A stretch of 64,000 nucleotides of DNA, taken from positions 124,001 to 188,000 of the forward strand of contig CDRNVI010000140.1 of assembly GCA_977017575.1 (NCBI GenBank), given 5' to 3'. Origin of the DNA: Paramoeba atlantica. Lineage: Eukaryota > Protista > Discosea. The notes under the pieces were generated by a model, which worked only from the letters and a program-made list of their open reading frames with translations, was not told the DNA's origin and ran no database searches. This document shows, one piece after another, positions 28,501 to 62,284 of this stretch; the first letter of the stretch is position 1; every line of letters starts with the position of its first letter. The position numbers and the translations under genes were made by a program.

Positions 28501-30280
28501 TGAGGCTGATCTAATGAGTGAAAACTTAAAATATGAGGGGGAATTTCGATATCCGAAATATCCACCTCCCAAGTTGTCACATCTGCGTTAAACATTGAGC
28601 TTTTTTCTTCGGATGTTGGTGGCATTTCTGGGGAGTGTTTTTCCTTGTCTCTTTTTCCTTTTTTCTTCTTTTTTCCAAATATCGATTTGAAAATTGTACT
28701 TTTTGGTTTCAGATTGGCAAGGGAATCGATTAAAAGACAACCAGGCTCTCCAACGCACATGACTTTCATTTTGTGTAAAAAAACTTCTTCTGAATTTTGT
28801 GATCGAATAAGCCTAAAAACCCAAAAAGAATTAATTGTTTGAGAAAATCTGACCACCCACCACAAAGAATTTTTTTCTTGGTTGGAAAAATTACAAAATG
28901 GAAAAGGAGATGAATAAAAAACCTGGCAAGATCAACAGGAGAGAGGGAAAAGAGAGCCGGCTGAAGAAACCCAGTGTTTCCCTCGATTAATAAATATTGA
29001 AGTCTTGGAAGACTCCCCAAAAAGTAAGGAAGGGAGTGGATCAGATTATTGGAAAGATCAAGGGTCTCCAAAGAATAAAGAAACCCAACAGACGGAGGGA
29101 GCGATTCAAGTCTTGAAATCGAAAAATAGAAAAAAAAAAAAGCACGATTTAAAAAAAAATAAAAGGGAAAAAAAATCCGGTCAACCGGAATCGAACCAGT
29201 GACCTAGAGATGTCTACAACTTGCTACAGTCTCCCGCTCTACCAGCTGAGCTATGACCGGATTTGTGGAAAAGTATGCAAATTTTGGTGTTCTTATGTGA
29301 TGGAAAAAGAAAAAACCTGTTGTATGATAAATCCAACACTTTTAACTGTGAAAGGCAATTGATTTGAGGTGAAATCTTCGTAAGTTTGTTGTGTCTTAAT
29401 GATAAATTCTGTGGTGGGAAAATATTAAATTGGTTTCAAGGAGAAAAAGAGCTTTTGTCGCCAAGTTTTTCAAAAAAAAAACCTGAAGGTTCATTAAATG
29501 CAGGATCTCAGCTGGAAATTCAACAAAATCATTTCGAGAAAGGTTTAAGGTTGTCACATGTAACATCGAGCTCCCAAATTTTGGAAGAATAGTCAAAGTT
29601 CGATTTCGAAACGATAAGCTGTCCTTCCTTTTCAACCGACACAACCTCAAGTCGTCATTCGAAGCTAAACATTCAAATAAATCAACAACTTCTTCGACAT
29701 TCTTTGGGAGACTGCCAACAATCAGTTCTGATGGGAGTTGGATTGAATCAATTTCCAAAGAAATTAAAGTAAAGTTACGACGAATGGCTGGTAAAACAAC
29801 AGATGTCAACTTCTCAGAAATGGGATTAGCAGTTAAGTCAAGCTTTGCAAGTCCCTTTGATTCTTCCAAAACTTTGACAAGAGCTTTTCCAATTCCATCA
29901 GTAATTTCATTGTGAGAAAGGCAAAGAGTCTATTAAATAAGAATAATAAAAAAGGAGAGATGTCAGAAAAAAAAAGACAACAAAATCCCAAAAACAAAAA
30001 AAAAAAGAAGAACTTTTAGTGTCGGGTGAGATGAAACGGAGTGGAACAACAAACTCGCTGAATCAACATCAAGATGAACCCCTTGGGCAACTATCTTTCG
30101 AAGACAACTATTGAGAGAGAGAGCAGAGATCCAGTGAGCGTGAAGTGGCGCGAGATTTTGACCCACTTCCGGATTGAAAACAACTGAATCAACGATCAAA
30201 TTTCGAAGTCCTTGATCATTTTCCTCGATTCGTTTGACCGTTCCGTTCCATTTAGCGTTTCTCTCTTTCCAATGTTCCAT
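22567..30280 (-). CDS. Roco-type protein: LRR - degenerate ROC - COR - TKL kinase - coiled coil/low-complexity tail; many exons
   Basis: LRRs (LKVLDLSYNRLESLP; LETLDLSNNLIHSLP); ROC-like KMKVMCVG..WDLGQ..FLASRAIYLVAFNL..LEYWL..APIILVG; COR-like WRNGMLL; kinase VAVK, REV..M..L.DPNIVQL, HRDLKSPNILL, KVTDFGLS, WLAPEV, DCYSLGVILWEL. Confidence 0.87.
29176..29260 (-). tRNA. trnY-GTA: tRNA-Tyr(GUA) with a 12-nt intron (29223-29212), nested in a Roco intron
   Basis: The reverse complement folds as a cloverleaf: acceptor CCGGTCA/TGACCGG plus discriminator A, D arm GCTC-AGCTGGTA-GAGC, anticodon arm GGAGA-CTGTAG^A-TCTCT, T arm ACTGG-TTCGATT-CCGGT. A poly-T Pol III terminator follows immediately. Confidence 0.97.
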
Positions 30281-55620: not shown

Positions 55621-55919
55621 CACTTGCCTTGCCAAAGTTGCTGGAAGACTTGAGGGAACAGTTCCCAAAGTTTTCACTTTCGAAGAGTCTGATGACGAAA
55701 AAGACTGATTTGGTCAAACAAAACAACAAGAAAGAGAGAAGGAAAAAACGGAAAAACAGAGAATCTCTTTTCTCTCCAAATTTGAAAAAATCAAATTAAA
55801 ATTTTCTCATGAAAAATAACCGTCAAATGGGAGCAACTTGATTCCAGTCGATAAATAAAGCCCTTTTGTGGTCGATACCCAATTATGAGCTTTTTTGTTT
55901 TTTTTTGGGGTTGGCGAAG

Positions 55920-57174
55920 ATGAGTTTTGTTGTGTTGGTTTTGATTTTTGTGGCTGTTGCCCACTGCTTTGATCCCCACAATCACGGGTTTGTTGCGGAT
56001 GTTCAATTTAGAAATGATCCTGCGAGAAGAGAGAAAATTACTGAACCTCTTAAAATGTTACCACTTGATCAGATCCCAAGTAATGATTCTCCCTTCTTTC
56101 TTTCATCTTTTCCAAGCGAAGACTGACTTTTTCTATCCAAGCCAACTTTTCTTGGGTGAATGTGGATGGGACCAACTATCTTTCGACCATTCGTAACCAA
56201 CACATCCCCCAGGTTTTCTCAATAAACAAACATTGTTTCTTCTGATTCTGAGAATACCTTAAAACTTTCTTTTTAAAGTATTGTGGGAGTTGTTGGGCGC
56301 ATGCTGTGGCAAGCGCTCTTGCAGATCGTGTCAACATCAAACGTGGAGGAGCTTTCCCCAGCGCATACCTCAGTGTCCAAGAAGTGATTGATTGTGGAGA
56401 CGCTGGAAGTTGTAATGGTGGAGATGATCTTCGAGTTTGGGAGCATGCTCACAGAGTTGGGCTTGTTGATGAAACTTGCAACAATTACCAAGCTATTAAC
56501 CAAGAATGTGATGATTTTAATACTTGTGGGAATTGTGATCCTGGATCTGGAAATTGTTATTCTGTCCCATCAAGTTATTACAAGAGATATACTGTTGGTG
56601 ATTATGGGGGGGTCAGTGCTGATCAAATCAAAAATGAGGTTCTTTTCTGACTGTCCATGTTCGTTGTGTTGTTGCGTTGTTAATATTCTGTTATTTGGTT
56701 GAATTTCTTTTTTTCATTTTCATTTTCTTTTCCTTTTTTCCCCCAGGTTTATCAACGAGGGCCAATTTCTTGTGGGATTATGGCGACCAGCGGTCTTGAA
56801 TCTTACACAGAAGGAATCTACTCTGAATATCATGCTGTAAGTGTTTTTCTTTCTCTTTTCTTCTATTGACAATAAATTCTTATTTTTTTTCAACAAAATA
56901 GATCATAGAGATTAATCATGTTGTGAGCATAGTTGGTTTTGGTGAAGAGAATGGTGTTGCTTTTTGGCAAGTCAGAAATTCGTGGGGTGCTTATTATGGA
57001 GAACAAGGTCTCTTCCGAATTGTTCAGAACACTCAGAAGGGGCTCGATTATAATCTTGGTATTGAAACTGACTGTCATTTTGGAGGTTTTCTTTTTCTTT
57101 TCTCATTCCTCTCTTCGTTTTCTCTCCAATTCAATGAAGAACTAATTGTCCTTGCAGTCCCAACAAGTTGGTGA
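55920..57174 (+). CDS. CTSZ: Cathepsin Z/X-like protease, copy c
   Basis: QHIPQ|[30 protein letters not shown]; has an extra intron near 56837 relative to copies a and b. Confidence 0.92.
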
Positions 57175-57375
57175 TGTGTGGTTGCGAAAGGAACAGATAA
57201 TAATTCTTTTTTGTTTTTGGTCCAAACTTTATTTTCAAAATAATGAAAAAAAGAGAAAAATGAGATTTTTCTCCTTCATCAAACTTGGCGGTGGAATAAT
57301 ATTAATTTTAAAAGATTTAATTTTCTCTGTTTTTCAGTTTTTCAGTTTTTTTTTTGCCCCTATTGCACAGGATTT

Positions 57376-60300
57376 TCAGTTTTCTGTTCGAATCTTCTTC
57401 TGTCGAGGAGAAGCAAACTCTCCCTTCACAGAACCCCCTTCCTCTTTTTTCTCATTCTCATCAAGAACAAAGGGAGGGATTGGTATTGGATCTGACATGA
57501 GAGTGTTTAAAGGTGAGATTACTTCAGAAACAGAATGATGTGCATGGAGTTCCCTTGGATTACTCCCCTCATACTCGTAAGAACGAGGCTTTCCGTTTGT
57601 TCGTTTTCTTTTCTTTCCTGGACCAGATGAAGCGGATTGTTCGACATTGAGAGCGGCAATGGCAGCAGTGAAAACACTTGCAATTTTGGAGCTTCCTTCT
57701 TCTCTCATCTTTTCCTCAGCAAGAGAACTCTTTGTTGTGCTTCTCTCTTGTTCATATTCATCCATTTGGTCCAACGAACGTGTAAATTGAGATAAATCTT
57801 CAGCAATTTGAGCATCTTTTGCAATCATCCTCGCTGCGAACAGCACCCCCAACAAGTTAATATTCATTGATTTTGTTTGGGAGAGGATGGGGACGTCTTC
57901 TAGCCATCCTTTGGGATGGTCAGAAAATTCGGCAAGGAGATCATCCGCGAGTGCTGAGATAAAATTTTGATTGTAGACCTGCAGTACCGATCAGAAAAGT
58001 TCAAAGAAGTTTTTGACACTGATACACTCATTTTTGACAAAAACAACAACACAAACAGAAAAACAATGAAAAATTCTTTCCCTTCTTCTCTGTTCTCCAT
58101 GGCAATTGAAAAAAAAACCTGGTTATCTCCAACCCAAAATACCGCATCAGCACGAAAAGTAATTGACAATTGTTGAGAAAATCGAGCGAGGTATCGGTAA
58201 TGTGTCTATTTTTTGAAAAAAAAAAATAAAATAAGACTTCTTATTCTTGCACCATGAGATTTCTTCTCATTATCAGTACTTCGAAATTGAATTTCTCTCC
58301 CCCTCCCCCTCTTTGTTCATTTAATTCATTTTTAAGAGGAGAAACGAACCTTCAATGAGTCGTGAGCGTATTTCATTGGTCCAGGGAGCTTGGCACGTAT
58401 CCTCTTCATTGCTTTGAAAATTATCTTGCTTGCTTTTGGCTGTTCCTCCTTCTCTTCTGATCCCTCTCCCTAGAAATTCCATAAGTAAATAAGCAGGGGA
58501 AGACAAGAAAATAATATTAAAAATCAAAACCTGTTTTCCTTCAGCAGAGTCAGACCAAATCCCAAGAAAATCTTCATCTCCCGGTTCGATCTTCGGTTTT
58601 TCTCCCACAAGCCTTTTTTGATGTTCCATTGTTCGTTGGGCAGTCAAGGCTCTTCCTTGTACGGATCCTGGGAAACGAGACAGAGAAAAGTGTTGAGAGA
58701 GAGGTAGCGAGAGATATTAATTCAAGAGAGAAAGAGAGAAACCTGCGGTAGCACTCAAAAGAGGAATTTCACGACCAGTTTTGTGATGTTCAATGGCAGC
58801 AAAACAATTCGCAACCCCTCTTCCGCAACAAACATCCTCCCATTCAATGGGATTGTTCGCTATATTTTTTGGATGTGAGAAGGGAAAAGACCGATAAAAA
58901 GAAAAGGAACAAAGGAACAAAAGAGAAAGACAATATTTTTTTAAGAGTAATTAACAGATAAAAAGGGGAGGAGAAAGGAGGGAAAAAAAAACCTCCATAA
59001 ATTCGTTCAGACAGATAAGAAGTGATATCATCATCAAATACTTTTGAAGAATCTTCTCCTCCGAGTGGTGTAACGTACATATGTCCAGCTTCAAGAGGGA
59101 TTACTTCCCTATTTTTTTTGTGTGTTGATATTAGAACAATACCAAAAAAATCCACAGCATTTTTTTCAAATAAATCAAACCTCATCTCTCCTTTTACAAA
59201 ACGAATTACACCACTTCCGAGTCCCTTCCCAACCCAACAAACAAGATAATTATTAAAAGGTTGAAGATTTATACTCCGGCGACCAGAATTAGACGAAGAA
59301 GAAGAAATGGGAGGTGAAGAACAAGAACTTACGGAAAATCTTGGACAAGTTGAATGTTGACAAGGAGAACATCTACAAGGAGAACATCTACAAACCGAAG
59401 AAGAGGAAGAAGAGGAAGACGATGAAGACACAAAAGACGGAGATGAAGAGGTCGAGGAAGATGATGAAAAGGAGGAGGAAGAGGAAAGAGCGGGGTGATA
59501 AGGGTCCTTCTTGGACATGGTAGCAAAGTATTCTGAGATTTGATTATCCTGTCAAGAAATATTTTAATAATCAAAGGTCGGGTTAGAAAAAAAAAAAAGC
59601 AAAACAATTCAAGTTTGAGATTATCAAAAAATGGAAAAAACCTGAGAAAGCTTCATTATCCCAAAACAAGCAGCTTCAACGTCATTCAAAAACCTTGTTC
59701 TCCCAAGAGGAAATAAAAAAGACGGCAAGTCCTCCGTCGAAATTCGAATAGAACTCTCTGTGCCAGTAGAATAACCAACTAAATCCACCTTTGTACCATT
59801 TTGAAACACTCTTCCTGCCACATCAAGCGCCGCACCAAATGCTTGGACCCCTCCAAGAGACTCAGTAACTTGCGATGCGACATCTTGAAACCCATTAAGG
59901 AGTGTTGTAACATCTGTGGCTTGGAATCGGGTGATTGTGATAAATTTTGAACCAGAAATTCCAATCACGACACGAGTATGAGATGCCCCAACGTCAACAG
60001 CAACATAGTACCGAAATTTTCCGGTCATTGAAATTGTTTTCTTGTGCCATTTCGTCAGTTTTGCCTTTACTGCGTCATCAATGACAACTCCGTCTTCTTT
60101 CTTTCTTCTTGCTGGGTCTATGAGATGTTTGTGGGGATGTAAAGAGAGTGCTTCGACACCTGGCAGTACTTTTCCGCTCAGTACAAGAGAACTCACAGCG
60201 TCACCTGGTGGTGAATTTTTTTAAAAATAAAACTAGGAAAAAACAAACAAAAAACAAACCTGTACTCACGTGGGTCAACTTTTCTTCAGTTCCCCAAATT

Positions 60301-61725
60301 CGACAAGCTTGGCAAGTATCAACTCCACACACAATCACAGTCGATCCTTTTGAAGAAGTTTCAACTAAAGAATCCATCAAAGATTTTGTCCCAACAGCGA
60401 ATTTTCCAAATTCATAAACACCGAGCGGGCCATTCCAGATGACGGTTGCTGCTTGTTCCACAACAGATTTAAAAAGGAGACGCGATCGAACTCCGATATC
60501 GAGTGCCATCATTCCTGGTGGAATTCCTTTGTTTCATCAAAGATAAGTTTTGTGTGAAAAAGGGGAAGAGGCCTTAAATTAATCAAAGATAAAAGGAAAA
60601 GAAGAGAAAGAGGAAGGAAAACCAGTTGAATCATCTGCGAAATCAACGACCCCATCATAAGCGAAACGATCAGCAATTACATAATCAACCGGAAAGTAAA
60701 GTTTGACTCCATTTCGAATCGCACTTGCCTTGTTGATTTAGAAAAAAAAAAAAATGTTAGAAGCAATTTTGTAAAAAGATATAAAAGAAGAGAAGCAAAA
60801 GTTTTCGGAAAGGGAAGAAGAAAAAAAAAATCCATTTTTACCTCGATCTCCTTGACAAAAGGTTCCAAATCTTCATTAAAAACCGAACTTCCAATGGGGA
60901 TATTATTTAAAAACTTCTTCATTGTAAAAGCAGGAGCACCAGCAATAATCATCATATCAACCTTGGTAATCAAGTGACGAATCATATCTTTTTTTGCCAT
61001 CAAACTTGATCCCCCAATAATCGCCAACAGAGGTCTTTGCGGAGATTCGAGAGCTTCTGAAAAATAATCGAGTTCTTTCATCATTAATAACCCTGCAGCA
61101 CGTATAGGGATATCAATTCCAATAATTGAAGAGTGAGTACGGTGCATTGTCGCAAAAGCATCTTGAACATAGACATCCGCCAGAGACGACAGAAAATTTC
61201 GGAATTGTTCCACTGCATCTTTACTAACATCGTTGCCTGTTTCTTCATTGTGGAAGCGAAGATTTTCGAGCAGAATAACTTCTCCTGGTTTGAGATGTGC
61301 ACATCTTTCTTTCACTTCACTGGTTTTTGGAAAAAAAAATCATTAAGGAGGTGTGGTGTTTTGGGGGTGGCGAAAAAAAAAAGGGGGGGGGAGAAGGGGA
61401 AAAAAATAAATTATAAAAATAGAAACCTTCCCATACAATCACTTAAAAACTCAACTGGTCGATGTAATCTTTTCGAAATCTTTTCCGCAAAAGGAGAAAG
61501 AGAGAGCTGAGGAACAAATCTGCCATTCGGTCTCCCAATATGGCTGATGAGTATCAGAGCCCCTCCCTTTTCCAAAATATATTTCATCGTCGGAATTCCC
61601 TCCATCAATCTTCTAAAGCTTACAACATGCCCATTTCGCATCTCCACATTCAAGTCCGTTCGAAGGAGGACTTTTTTCCCATTGAGTTTGACTTGGTCAA
61701 TCCCCAATTTGAGAAGAGAAGCCAT
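57376..61725 (-). CDS. Phosphoglycerate kinase-like / glucokinase fusion protein (about 1086-1110 aa, 11-12 exons)
   Basis: Exons 61725-61427, 61319-60842, 60728-60623, 60526-60260, 60204-59642, 59548-58993, 58859-58743, 58667-58531, 58469-58350, 58205-58119 and 57978-57376 are all GT-AG and phase-consistent (sum 3333 nt). PGK motifs: RTDLNV, SHIGRP, LLENLRF, WNGPLGVYE, GKVLPGVEAL. Glucokinase motifs: VDVGAS, LFPLGRTRFLNDVEA, GKGLGS, PLEAGH, WEDVCCGRG, VGDNQV, NINLLG. Confidence 0.9.
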
Positions 61726-62284
61726 TTTTCTTTCTCACTTTTTGAAAGGTTCTTTCTTTGAAGGAGAAAAATAAGACTGAGAACATGAAGTAGAAGCACC
61801 CTATCGTTTTTTTTTTCTCTTGCCTTGGTCTCTTCTTGACTTTTCTTTTGGTCTTTCTTCTTTCTTTTTGGGTTTTTTCTTGGAAGAAGTGTTTTGTCTT
61901 TTCCGTTCGCGAAGCGCTCTTTTTTCAAAGGAAGAATGCGTCCCGAAATGAATTTGTGAAAAGACTTTTTTAGTTTTCCAGTCCCCTGAAAAAACCTTCA
62001 CCGAATGAGAAAACCGAGATTTCCCCCAAAATTTTAAAGGATGCTTTTTTTTCGACTGCGCGAAAAATTGGAAGATTTTTTCTCCCGTTTTTTTTGATTG
62101 CAAATTTTTCGCCAAGCGATGCGAGTTTTCTTTGCTCCGCCGAACTTTCATTCTAATTTCGCCAGCCACCAAAATTAAATTAATTTTGGAGGAATATTCT
62201 CCTCTTTTTTTTTTGTTTTGAGGGCTTCTGTCTCTCAAAGAGTTGTTTAGAAGTTTTGAAAATGTTTGAGAACGAGAAAAAAGA

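What the first reader, a model, noticed from the sequence alone, without database searches (positions are those of the whole stretch)
57376..61725. Phosphoglycerate kinase-glucokinase fusion gene
Seen in sequence: a full-length PGK fold runs without a stop into a glucokinase. The fusion does not depend on my splicing model, because the PGK C-terminal signature (SGKVLPGVEALS) and the glucokinase first motif (YVAVDVGASHTRV) lie in one uninterrupted exon (60204-59642), about 45 aa apart. All 11 exons are phase-consistent. Established: PGK fusions I know of are PGK-TPI (Thermotoga) and PAS-PGK (trypanosomatids). The glucokinase resembles group-A bacterial/trypanosomatid Glk (LFP.G....LND.EA, SEYF, PLE.G, VGDN.V, NLNL.G) rather than eukaryotic hexokinase. 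Inference: joining the first ATP-consuming step of glycolysis to the fold of the first ATP-producing step may form a feedback-regulated kinase or metabolite sensor. I know of no description of this architecture, but could not search.
Basis: partly seen in the sequence, partly recalled or inferred. Interest (0 to 1): 0.9.

Follow-up and report, generated by a model that had tools for sequence, protein, structure and literature searches.

The report
PGK-like domain fused to glucokinase
An amoeba gene really does join a whole phosphoglycerate-kinase fold to a whole glucokinase in one protein; relatives carry the same fusion, no paper searched describes it, and the PGK half looks like a metabolite-binding module rather than a working enzyme.

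Summary
It has a full PGK fold (aa 1-404), a 21-aa linker, a complete amoeba-type group-A glucokinase domain (aa 426-944) and a tail of about 140 aa.

- **Junction:** the PGK C-terminus and the glucokinase N-lobe lie in one open exon, 60204-59642.
- **Expression:** RNA-derived contigs of a public run remove 8 of the 11 introns exactly as modelled.
- **Conservation:** the architecture recurs in four other lineages on independently assembled metagenome contigs, at 45-75% identity. Their glucokinase domains form one clade, so this is an old, single, maintained fusion and not a chimera.
- **PGK half:** every 3-phosphoglycerate-binding residue is kept. The phosphate-gripping and catalytic positions are replaced (K215S, GGGD to CGVD, GGG to GDA, with G395D in all five members). 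A conventional PGK is unlikely.
- **Glucokinase half:** the catalytic Asp and the glucose ligands are kept everywhere. The ATP motifs are canonical in two relatives but altered in this species (GAS, GKG).
- **Tail:** it varies, but ends in basic, NLS-like clusters in all four members whose tails I could read.

No long fusion protein and no paper describing it turned up in my searches. The function, a metabolite-coupled kinase or sensor, is inferred.

The parts
57376..61725 (-). Whole coding region of the PGK-like/glucokinase fusion gene, ATG 61725-61723 to TGA 57378-57376; 12 exons, 1086 aa
   Evidence: Spliced model. RNA coverage of run X5 is confined to about 57357-61752.
61427..61725 (-). 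Exon 1: PGK N-domain start (RTDLNV, RR, SHIGRP)
   Evidence: Pfam PGK 7.7e-24. Intron 1 (61426-61320) is removed in RNA contig X5. The start MASL(L/R)KLG is shared with L002 and L007.
60842..61319 (-). Exon 2: rest of the PGK N-domain (LENLRFH, DAFATMHR) and start of the C-domain. GGSSLMAKK replaces GGAKVSDKI; the K215 equivalent is Ser at 61006-61004.
   Evidence: Pfam PGK 2.6e-45; alignment to PDB 3oza.
60623..60728 (-). Exon 3: PGK C-domain segment (fills Pfam HMM positions about 245-280)
   Evidence: Continuity with exons 2 and 4 and with the L006 ORF. No RNA coverage in run X5.
60260..60526 (-). Exon 4: PGK C-domain (WNGPLGVYE kept; IVCGVDTC replaces IIGGGDTA, 60329-60318)
   Evidence: Pfam PGK 5.8e-23; alignment to yeast PGK chain 1fw8.
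59642..60204 (-). Exon 5, the junction exon: PGK C-terminus (G-DAVSSLVLSGKVLPGVEALS), linker aa 405-425 (60142-60080), glucokinase N-lobe (DVGASHT 59995-59975, LND 59689-59681)
   Evidence: One open frame; PDB glucokinase hits; DNA contig X3 record 20 spans 59491-60233.
59181..59548 (-). Exon 6: SEYF helix, Ser/Cys-rich low-complexity insert (aa 592-662, 59488-59276), phosphate-2 motif GKGLG (59230-59216)
   Evidence: Intron 5 removed in RNA (loose ends at 59551 and 59641). The insert is absent from all relatives and is built of short tandem repeats. RNA depth is nonzero across the insert.
58993..59108 (-). Exon 7: PLEAGH glucose-binding motif (59092-59081)
   Evidence: Introns 6 and 7 removed in RNA contig X5.
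58743..58859 (-). Exon 8: EWEDVCCGRG motif (glucose-binding Glu at 58845-58843, adenosine motif)
58531..58667 (-). Exon 9: start of the acidic insert (aa 781-821) inside the glucokinase C-lobe
58350..58469 (-). Exon 10: end of the insert; KLPGPMKYAHDSLK
58119..58205 (-). Exon 11: HYRYLARF...VFWVGDNQ
57376..57978 (-). Exon 12: end of the glucokinase domain (NINLLG, to 57805) and C-terminal tail aa 945-1086 (57804-57379). The tail has a conserved helix KIASVFTAAIAALNVE (57687-57640) and basic clusters PGKKRKRTN (57621-57595) and SPRQKKIR (57411-57388).

Best explanation
This is one expressed gene of an intron-rich amoeba nucleus. It encodes a three-part protein.

1. A complete PGK fold. Its N-domain pocket for 3-phosphoglycerate / 1,3-bisphosphoglycerate is intact. 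Its phosphoryl-transfer and nucleotide-phosphate loops have been rebuilt, so it most likely binds a triose-phosphate metabolite (and perhaps the adenosine part of a nucleotide) without acting as a normal PGK.
2. A complete group-A glucokinase domain with an intact hexose pocket and catalytic Asp. It was probably a working glucokinase when the fusion arose. In this species its ATP-side motifs are relaxed.
3. A disordered-looking tail that ends in nuclear-localisation-like basic clusters.

The most likely working is that occupancy of the PGK-derived module by a lower-glycolysis metabolite is passed through the very short linker to the glucokinase domain. That would tune glucose phosphorylation, or in the more degenerate members glucose sensing.

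Shown: gene structure, expression, the two folds, conservation across five lineages, the residue pattern.
Inferred: loss of PGK catalysis, ligand binding, coupling between the halves, nuclear targeting.
For: - One frame, 12 exons. PGK Pfam hits on three exons. Glucokinase identity through PDB hits and a profile match at 320 bits.
- Splicing of 8 of 11 introns is confirmed in RNA contigs.
- The same architecture occurs in L002, L007, L003-5 and L006. L002 shares the single junction exon. L003 and L007 have a phase-consistent GT..AG intron in the linker.
- The five fusion glucokinase domains sit on one side of a branch with SH-aLRT 99, against 85 stand-alone enzymes.
- PGK half: of 111 columns at least 97% conserved in 111 canonical PGKs, 37 are changed in one or more members. 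None of D23, N25, R38, H62, R65, R122, R170, K219, N336 or E343 is changed. K215, G371, G373, D374, G395 and G396 are changed, with G371C and G395D in every member. The roles of these residues are taken from PMC7729029 section 3.1 and from established PGK enzymology.
- Glucokinase half: N557, D558, E700, H703 and E738 are invariant. GGT and GTG are canonical in L002 and L006, but read GAS/GKG here.
- The second half of the 'linker' corresponds to the N-terminal helix that stand-alone amoeba glucokinases already carry. The true tether is therefore only about 20 residues.
- C-terminal basic clusters are present in all four readable tails.
Against: - No biochemical data. Loss of PGK activity is inferred from residues only, and L006 still has K215.
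- Run X5's contigs are fragmentary. No listed RNA contig is shown bridging 60100-60200, and introns 2, 3 and 4 have no listed junction.
- L006 carries a frameshift in the linker. This could mean two separate products in that lineage, or an assembly error.
- The individual glucokinase exon pieces fail the Pfam threshold.
- NLS-like clusters in low-complexity tails are weak predictors.
- I could not check whether the genome also holds a canonical PGK and glucokinase.
Confidence: 0.6

Rival explanations
1. Truly bifunctional enzyme. Both halves are active, and the fusion channels ATP made by PGK straight to glucokinase, or co-regulates the first and seventh glycolytic steps.
For: Both folds are complete and under constraint. 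The adenosine-side residues K219, N336 and E343 are kept. L006 keeps K215 and all canonical glucokinase motifs. Active glycolytic fusions such as Thermotoga PGK-TIM are known (PMC7729029).
Against: In the window protein K215 is Ser, GGGD is CGVD and GGG is GDA. G395D and G371C are fixed in all five members, and D374 is H or A in two of them. These positions cradle the beta/gamma phosphate and Mg2+.
Confidence: 0.12
2. Both halves are catalytically dead in this species. The protein would be a nuclear glucose / triose-phosphate-binding regulator or scaffold, comparable to the moonlighting of nuclear hexokinases, and not a metabolic enzyme.
For: In the window protein the phosphate-1 motif is GAS, the phosphate-2 motif is GKG, and the Asn that is 100% conserved in stand-alone enzymes (TNY) is Gly. 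L003 is worse (GYP, GVG). The sugar ligands stay invariant. Basic NLS-like clusters sit at the extreme C-terminus in four lineages.
Against: G-A-S and a Lys in place of Thr may still support ATP binding. The catalytic Asp is kept. L002 and L006 look fully competent. Nuclear targeting is only a motif-level prediction.
Confidence: 0.2
3. Artefact: an assembly chimera, or two adjacent genes wrongly read as one (internal promoter or polyadenylation between the halves).
For: No listed RNA contig is shown crossing 60100-60200. L006 has the two halves in different frames.
Against: The junction lies inside one stop-free exon, here and in L002. A DNA contig from another run spans it. Four other lineages in independent assemblies have the same order and linker. 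Depth in run X5 is nonzero in every bin from 59555 to 60496. The L006 shift needs only a 2-nt loss at a GTGT run.
Confidence: 0.05

Closest known systems
Multidomain and 'dead' PGK-like proteins of kinetoplastids and ciliates (PGKL = PGK-CNB-HTH-TMD, PAS-PGK, Tetrahymena PGK-MYCBPAP), reviewed in PMC7729029
   Same: A PGK fold is fused to another domain. Some members have lost ATP-binding or catalytic residues and are proposed to be regulatory pseudoenzymes.
   Different: The partner domain here is a complete glucokinase, placed C-terminal. No PAS, CNB or HTH domain was found. The 3PG site is fully retained. The lineage is an amoeba, and the PGK half is about 50% identical to ordinary eukaryotic PGKs.
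Stand-alone group-A glucokinases of amoebae and heteroloboseans (PDB 8dtc, 6vzz with the Balamuthia 'BamaA' chain label, 6da0 matching the Naegleria fowleri UniRef entry; Vermistella, Pelomyxa, Planoprotostelium sequences)
   Same: Same fold and motifs (LNDxEA, PLEAGH, E..D..SGRG, GDNQV, NxNLxG) and the same N-terminal helix before DxGGT. Identity is 34-40%.
   Different: This domain is fused behind a PGK fold and separated from the stand-alone enzymes by a long stem branch. It carries two inserts and a tail. The ATP motifs are altered in this species.
Thermotoga maritima PGK-TIM and stramenopile TPI-GAPDH fusions
   Same: Two glycolytic enzyme folds in one polypeptide.
   Different: Those fusions join consecutive or near-consecutive, active steps. 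This one joins step 1 to a degenerate step 7 and has no TIM or GAPDH domain.
Trypanosoma cruzi / Leishmania glucokinase (PDB 2q2r, 5brd)
   Different: A far weaker match than the amoeba enzymes (E 3e-3 against 1.6e-22 for exon 5). A transfer from the kinetoplastid symbiont is therefore not supported.

Membership tests
Phosphoglycerate kinase (Pfam PF00162) | Full-length match to the PGK profile and fold | tested here: met
   Exons 1, 2 and 4 hit PF00162 at 85, 155 and 82 bits, covering HMM positions 1-367 of 379. PDB PGKs match exon 2 at E 1.5e-45 and exon 4 at 2.8e-23.
Phosphoglycerate kinase (Pfam PF00162) | N-domain basic patch and 3PG ligands (D23, N25, R38, H62, R65, R122, R170) | tested here: met
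   All are present in the window protein and in L002, L007 and L006. None appears among the changed invariant columns.
Phosphoglycerate kinase (Pfam PF00162) | Catalytic Lys215 (GGAK) | tested here: not met
   GGSS in the window and GGAS in L002; Arg in L007; kept only in L006.
Phosphoglycerate kinase (Pfam PF00162) | GGGD(T) loop (G371-D374) holding the beta-phosphate and Mg2+ | tested here: not met
   CGVD in the window; CGTH, CGTD and CGAA in relatives. Residue roles are taken from PMC7729029.
Phosphoglycerate kinase (Pfam PF00162) | STGGGAS loop (G394-G396) at the N-terminus of helix 14 | tested here: not met
   STGDAVS in the window. G395D is present in all five members.
Phosphoglycerate kinase (Pfam PF00162) | PGK enzymatic activity | not testable with these tools
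   Needs a recombinant protein assay.
Group-A glucokinase (Pfam PF02685, ASKHA superfamily) | Match to the family profile | tested here: inconclusive
   The separate exon pieces do not reach PF02685. The spliced protein matches a profile of 52 stand-alone homologues end to end at 320 bits. Seven of those homologues were scanned and all hit PF02685. Exon 5 hits solved glucokinases at 1.6e-22. The ortholog fragment P0003 hits PF02685 at 1.2e-16.
Group-A glucokinase (Pfam PF02685, ASKHA superfamily) | Catalytic Asp and hexose ligands (N-D of LND, E and H of PLEAGH, E of ExxDxxSG) | tested here: met
   Invariant in all five fusion members.
Group-A glucokinase (Pfam PF02685, ASKHA superfamily) | Phosphate-1 DxGGT and phosphate-2 GTG motifs | tested here: not met
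   DVGAS and GKG in the window. Canonical in L002 and L006; GYP/GVG in L003; GSS in L007.
Group-A glucokinase (Pfam PF02685, ASKHA superfamily) | Glucose phosphorylation activity | not testable with these tools
   Needs a G6PDH-coupled assay.
Kinetoplastid PGKL / PAS-PGK multidomain PGKs | PAS, cyclic-nucleotide-binding, HTH or transmembrane domain attached to the PGK | tested here: not met
   No such Pfam hit on any exon. The partner domain is a glucokinase.
PGK-TIM fusion (Thermotoga type) | TIM barrel C-terminal to the PGK | tested here: not met
   The C-terminal half is a glucokinase.

The most novel reading that the evidence does not exclude
The protein is a dual-metabolite sensor. A PGK-derived pseudoenzyme domain reads 3-PGA / 1,3-BPG (lower glycolysis), and a glucokinase-derived domain reads glucose. 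The conserved C-terminal basic clusters take the protein to the nucleus, where it links carbon status to gene expression. This would be a previously unknown, amoeba-specific counterpart of the hexokinase-based glucose sensors of yeast and plants. A bolder variant, not excluded, is that the invariant Asp at the G395 position lets the pair use 1,3-BPG rather than ATP as the phosphoryl donor for glucose.
Probability: 0.2. Interest if true: 0.8.

Novelty: new variant of a known kind. Interest (0 to 1): 0.6.

Why it matters
Fusions of metabolic enzymes reveal functional couplings that are hard to see otherwise. This one ties the entry step of glycolysis to a fold that recognises a product of its pay-off phase.

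The PGK half shows a clean, conserved pattern: the substrate pocket is kept and the catalytic loops are rewritten. That makes it a good natural case of an enzyme turned into a ligand-binding regulatory module.

Across the five members the glucokinase ATP motifs range from canonical to clearly degenerate, which gives a built-in evolutionary series for study.

If the coupling is real, it would be a new allosteric design for a hexose kinase. The organism group includes fish-gill pathogens (Paramoeba / Neoparamoeba, according to earlier notes of this scan that I did not verify), and amoeba glucokinases are already being pursued as drug targets (PMC10644346).

Tried and rejected
- **Pfam on glucokinase exon pieces**: no PF02685 hit. 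I got round this with PDB and profile searches.
- **Staggered PGK+Glk alignment as a long query**: MAFFT overlaid the two halves (707 columns), so the alignment was not used. The word-indexed 5.8-billion library was therefore never searched in the 750-1250 aa range. Absence of annotated fusions rests on the length-free phmmer search of 1.84 billion representatives with exon 5. It gave no hit above 460 aa except two repeat proteins. Two length-limited searches also found none.
- **JGI metagenome scans**: both found nothing, even though L003-L006 are JGI contigs. That collection evidently lacks them, so the blanks mean little.
- **ESM Atlas look-alikes of exon 5**: only bacterial glucokinase clusters.
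- **Transfer of the glucokinase from the Perkinsela-like symbiont:** rejected. The gene has 11 spliceosomal introns, and the domain is far closer to amoeba enzymes than to T. cruzi.
- **Ser-rich stretch as an unrecognised intron:** rejected. It is in frame, built of short tandem repeats, and RNA contigs show depth across it. A small internal intron is not excluded.
- **Canonical PGK or glucokinase elsewhere in this genome:** earlier-notes searches found none recorded. That is not evidence of absence.
- **Structure prediction:** not run.
Full report
**1. What is in the sequence**

The region 57376-61725 carries a minus-strand, intron-rich gene. I placed the exon borders by eye from GT..AG sites and reading-frame continuity, then spliced them in a script.

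The result is 12 exons: 61725-61427, 61319-60842, 60728-60623, 60526-60260, 60204-59642, 59548-59181, 59108-58993, 58859-58743, 58667-58531, 58469-58350, 58205-58119 and 57978-57376. The CDS is 3261 nt and the protein 1086 aa. All 11 introns are GT..AG, 55-144 nt long, and 9 of them begin GTTT.

It is a single open frame that holds the PGK C-terminal motif (aa 393-404), a short linker and the first half of the glucokinase domain. The difference is an in-frame 72-nt intron (59180-59109).

**2. Is it real and expressed?**

- **RNA.** One public run (X5) holds cDNA-like contigs with joints at 57976/58117, 58468/58530, 58666/58742, 58859/58993, 59107/59180 and 61319/61427. The pieces of one contig also show intron 10 removed. 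Loose ends at 59551 and 59641 read straight from exon 6 into exon 5. So introns 1 and 5-11 are removed exactly as modelled. RNA depth is confined to about 57357-61752, which matches the gene's ends.
- **Gaps in the RNA.** The assembly is thin. It has no depth over 60497-60967, so introns 2 and 3 are untested. No listed contig is shown bridging 60100-60200, although every depth bin from 59555 to 60496 is nonzero.
- **DNA.** A contig of another run (X3, record 20) covers 58664-60233. A 44.6-kb ENA assembly contig carries the identical junction ORF.
- **Conservation.** This is the strongest argument against a chimera. A phmmer search of exon 5 against 1.84 billion representatives found ORF fragments at 52-65% identity. 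Their contigs carry PGK exons followed by glucokinase exons in the same order. They are L002 and L007 (two contigs of one ENA metagenome), L003-L005 (three JGI samples, one lineage) and L006 (a JGI contig with no introns in this gene).
- **Junction in the relatives.** L002 also has the junction in one exon. L003 and L007 have a phase-1 GT..AG intron inside the linker that keeps the frame. L006 has the two halves in different frames. The alignment shows that a 2-nt loss at a GTGT run would explain this. I cannot tell whether it is an error or real.

**3. The PGK half**

Pfam PGK hits exons 1, 2 and 4. The intronless L006 ORF aligns to mammalian PGK over its whole length at E 4e-115 and is about 50% identical to ordinary eukaryotic PGKs.

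I aligned 111 canonical PGKs and listed the 111 columns that are at least 97% conserved. In the fusion family 37 of these are changed in at least one member.

*Kept:*
- the 3PG / 1,3-BPG ligands D23, N25, R38, H62, R65, R122 and R170
- the adenosine-side residues K219, N336 and E343

*Changed, clustering on the phosphoryl-transfer machinery:*
- K215 is S in the window and L002, R in L007, and still K in L006.
- G371 is C in all four members where this region is readable.
- G373 is V, T, T or A.
- D374 is D, H, D or A.
- G395 is D in all five members.
- G396 is A, T, T, A or K.

The GGGD loop and its Asp hold the beta-phosphate and Mg2+ (PMC7729029). K215 and the G394-G396 loop stabilise the transferring phosphate; that statement rests on established PGK enzymology, from my own knowledge.

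Fixed replacements, rather than scattered decay, suggest a changed function under selection.

**4. The glucokinase half**

The separate exon pieces do not reach Pfam PF02685. Other evidence identifies the domain clearly:
- Exon 5 hits solved glucokinases: 8dtc at 1.6e-22, 6vzz (Balamuthia 'BamaA' label) at 5e-21, 6da0 at 1e-12, and T. cruzi only at 3e-3.
- The stand-alone homologues carry PF02685: seven were scanned here and the hits list it among their precomputed domains.
- A profile of 52 stand-alone homologues matches the spliced protein over HMM positions 6-371 of 374, at 320 bits. The match comes in three segments, split by a Ser/Cys-rich insert (aa 592-662) and an acidic insert (aa 781-821).
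- The nearest named stand-alone enzymes are from Vermistella and Pelomyxa. Naegleria, Planoprotostelium, Acrasis and Willaertia follow.

In a tree of 91 sequences the five fusion domains lie on one side of a branch with SH-aLRT 99 and length 0.67. That fits a single origin of the fusion.

Residue pattern across the family:
- The catalytic Asp and the sugar ligands (N557, D558, E700, H703, E738) are invariant.
- The ATP-side motifs vary. DxGGT and GTG are canonical in L002 and L006. They read GAS/GKG in the window, GYP/GVG in L003 and GSS in L007.
- An Asn that is 100% conserved in the stand-alone enzymes (TNY) survives only in L006.

The second half of the apparent linker matches the N-terminal helix that stand-alone amoeba glucokinases already have. 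The true tether is therefore only about 20 residues.

**5. The tail**

After the glucokinase domain come about 140 residues with little conservation. The exceptions are an amphipathic helix (KIASVFTAAIAALNVE, with counterparts in L003 and L007) and basic clusters at the very end of each readable tail:

| Member | Basic clusters in the tail |
|---|---|
| Window | PGKKRKRTN ... SPRQKKIRTEN* |
| L003 | TKRKAE ... PQKKKKRSIP* |
| L007 | PKKRRIS ... ERKRTRE ... SKRQRIEE* |
| L002 | REKRKEKGKRERE ... GGKRRRMAVSS* |

These look like nuclear localisation signals. That is a motif-level inference only.

**6. Organism**

Earlier notes of this scan describe the genome as a marine amoeba with a Perkinsela-like kinetoplastid symbiont. 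One such note lies on the same contig as this window. I did not verify the taxon.

The gene's 11 spliceosomal introns, and the amoeba affinity of its glucokinase domain, place it in the host nucleus and not in the symbiont. The genome paper for Paramoeba pemaquidensis does not mention glucokinase or PGK.

**7. Novelty**

Full-text searches found no description of a PGK-glucokinase fusion. Neither the PGK review nor a 2025 survey of eukaryotic central carbon metabolism mentions one.

No protein longer than 460 aa, apart from two repeat proteins, matched exon 5 among 1.84 billion representatives. That library includes EukProt, MMETSP and NCBI entries.

Dead or multidomain PGKs are known in kinetoplastids and ciliates, and fusions of glycolytic enzymes are known elsewhere. 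I therefore class this as a new variant of a known kind: a new partner domain, a new lineage, and a distinctive pattern in which the substrate site is kept and the transfer site rewritten.

**8. Verdict**

| Claim | My confidence |
|---|---|
| The PGK half is not a conventional PGK | about 0.7 |
| It acts as a metabolite-binding module coupled to the glucokinase domain (best explanation) | about 0.6 |
| This species' glucokinase half still phosphorylates glucose | open, about even |

Overall interest is 0.6.

Noticed in passing
window 59276-59488 (-): A 71-aa Ser/Cys-rich low-complexity insert sits in a surface loop of the glucokinase domain. It is built from 9-, 15- and 21-nt tandem repeats (for example CRCSPCRCSPC) and is absent from all four related lineages. 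It looks like a recent microsatellite expansion inside a coding exon.
   Followed up: partly
window 57979-61426, all 11 introns of the gene: Nine of the 11 introns start GTTT (GTTTGT, GTTTTT, GTTTCT...) and none has the common GTAAGT. This is an unusual 5' splice-site preference that may be typical of this genome.
   Followed up: no
L006:1220-1260: The intronless relative has the PGK-like and glucokinase ORFs in different frames. Loss of 2 nt at a GTGT run in the linker would explain it. It could be an assembly error, a pseudogene or a genuinely split gene.
   Followed up: partly
P0008 (MMETSP Transcript_4104, 406 aa): A stand-alone glucokinase close to this family ends in -SKL, a peroxisomal PTS1-like tripeptide. 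This hints at a peroxisomal glucokinase in some non-kinetoplastid protist.
   Followed up: no
window about 55900-57150 (+): A cathepsin-type cysteine protease gene (Peptidase_C1 hit on the matching ORF of L001) converges on the 3' end of the fusion gene. Only about 200 nt separate the two.
   Followed up: no
window 29176-29260 (-): The only Rfam hit in the window is an 85-nt tRNA. That is longer than the 71-position model, so it may have an intron or a long variable arm.
   Followed up: no
window 60741-60830, 61371, 61805-61872: Contigs of runs X1, X2 and X3 differ from the window at several positions in introns and in the 5' flanking sequence upstream of the start codon (substitutions and 1-2-nt indels). 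These are strain or haplotype differences within the same organism label.
   Followed up: no
L002 and L007 (both from ENA assembly ERZ25074155): Two distinct copies of the fusion gene occur in one metagenome, at 143x and 180x coverage. They could be two related amoebae or two paralogs in one genome.
   Followed up: no
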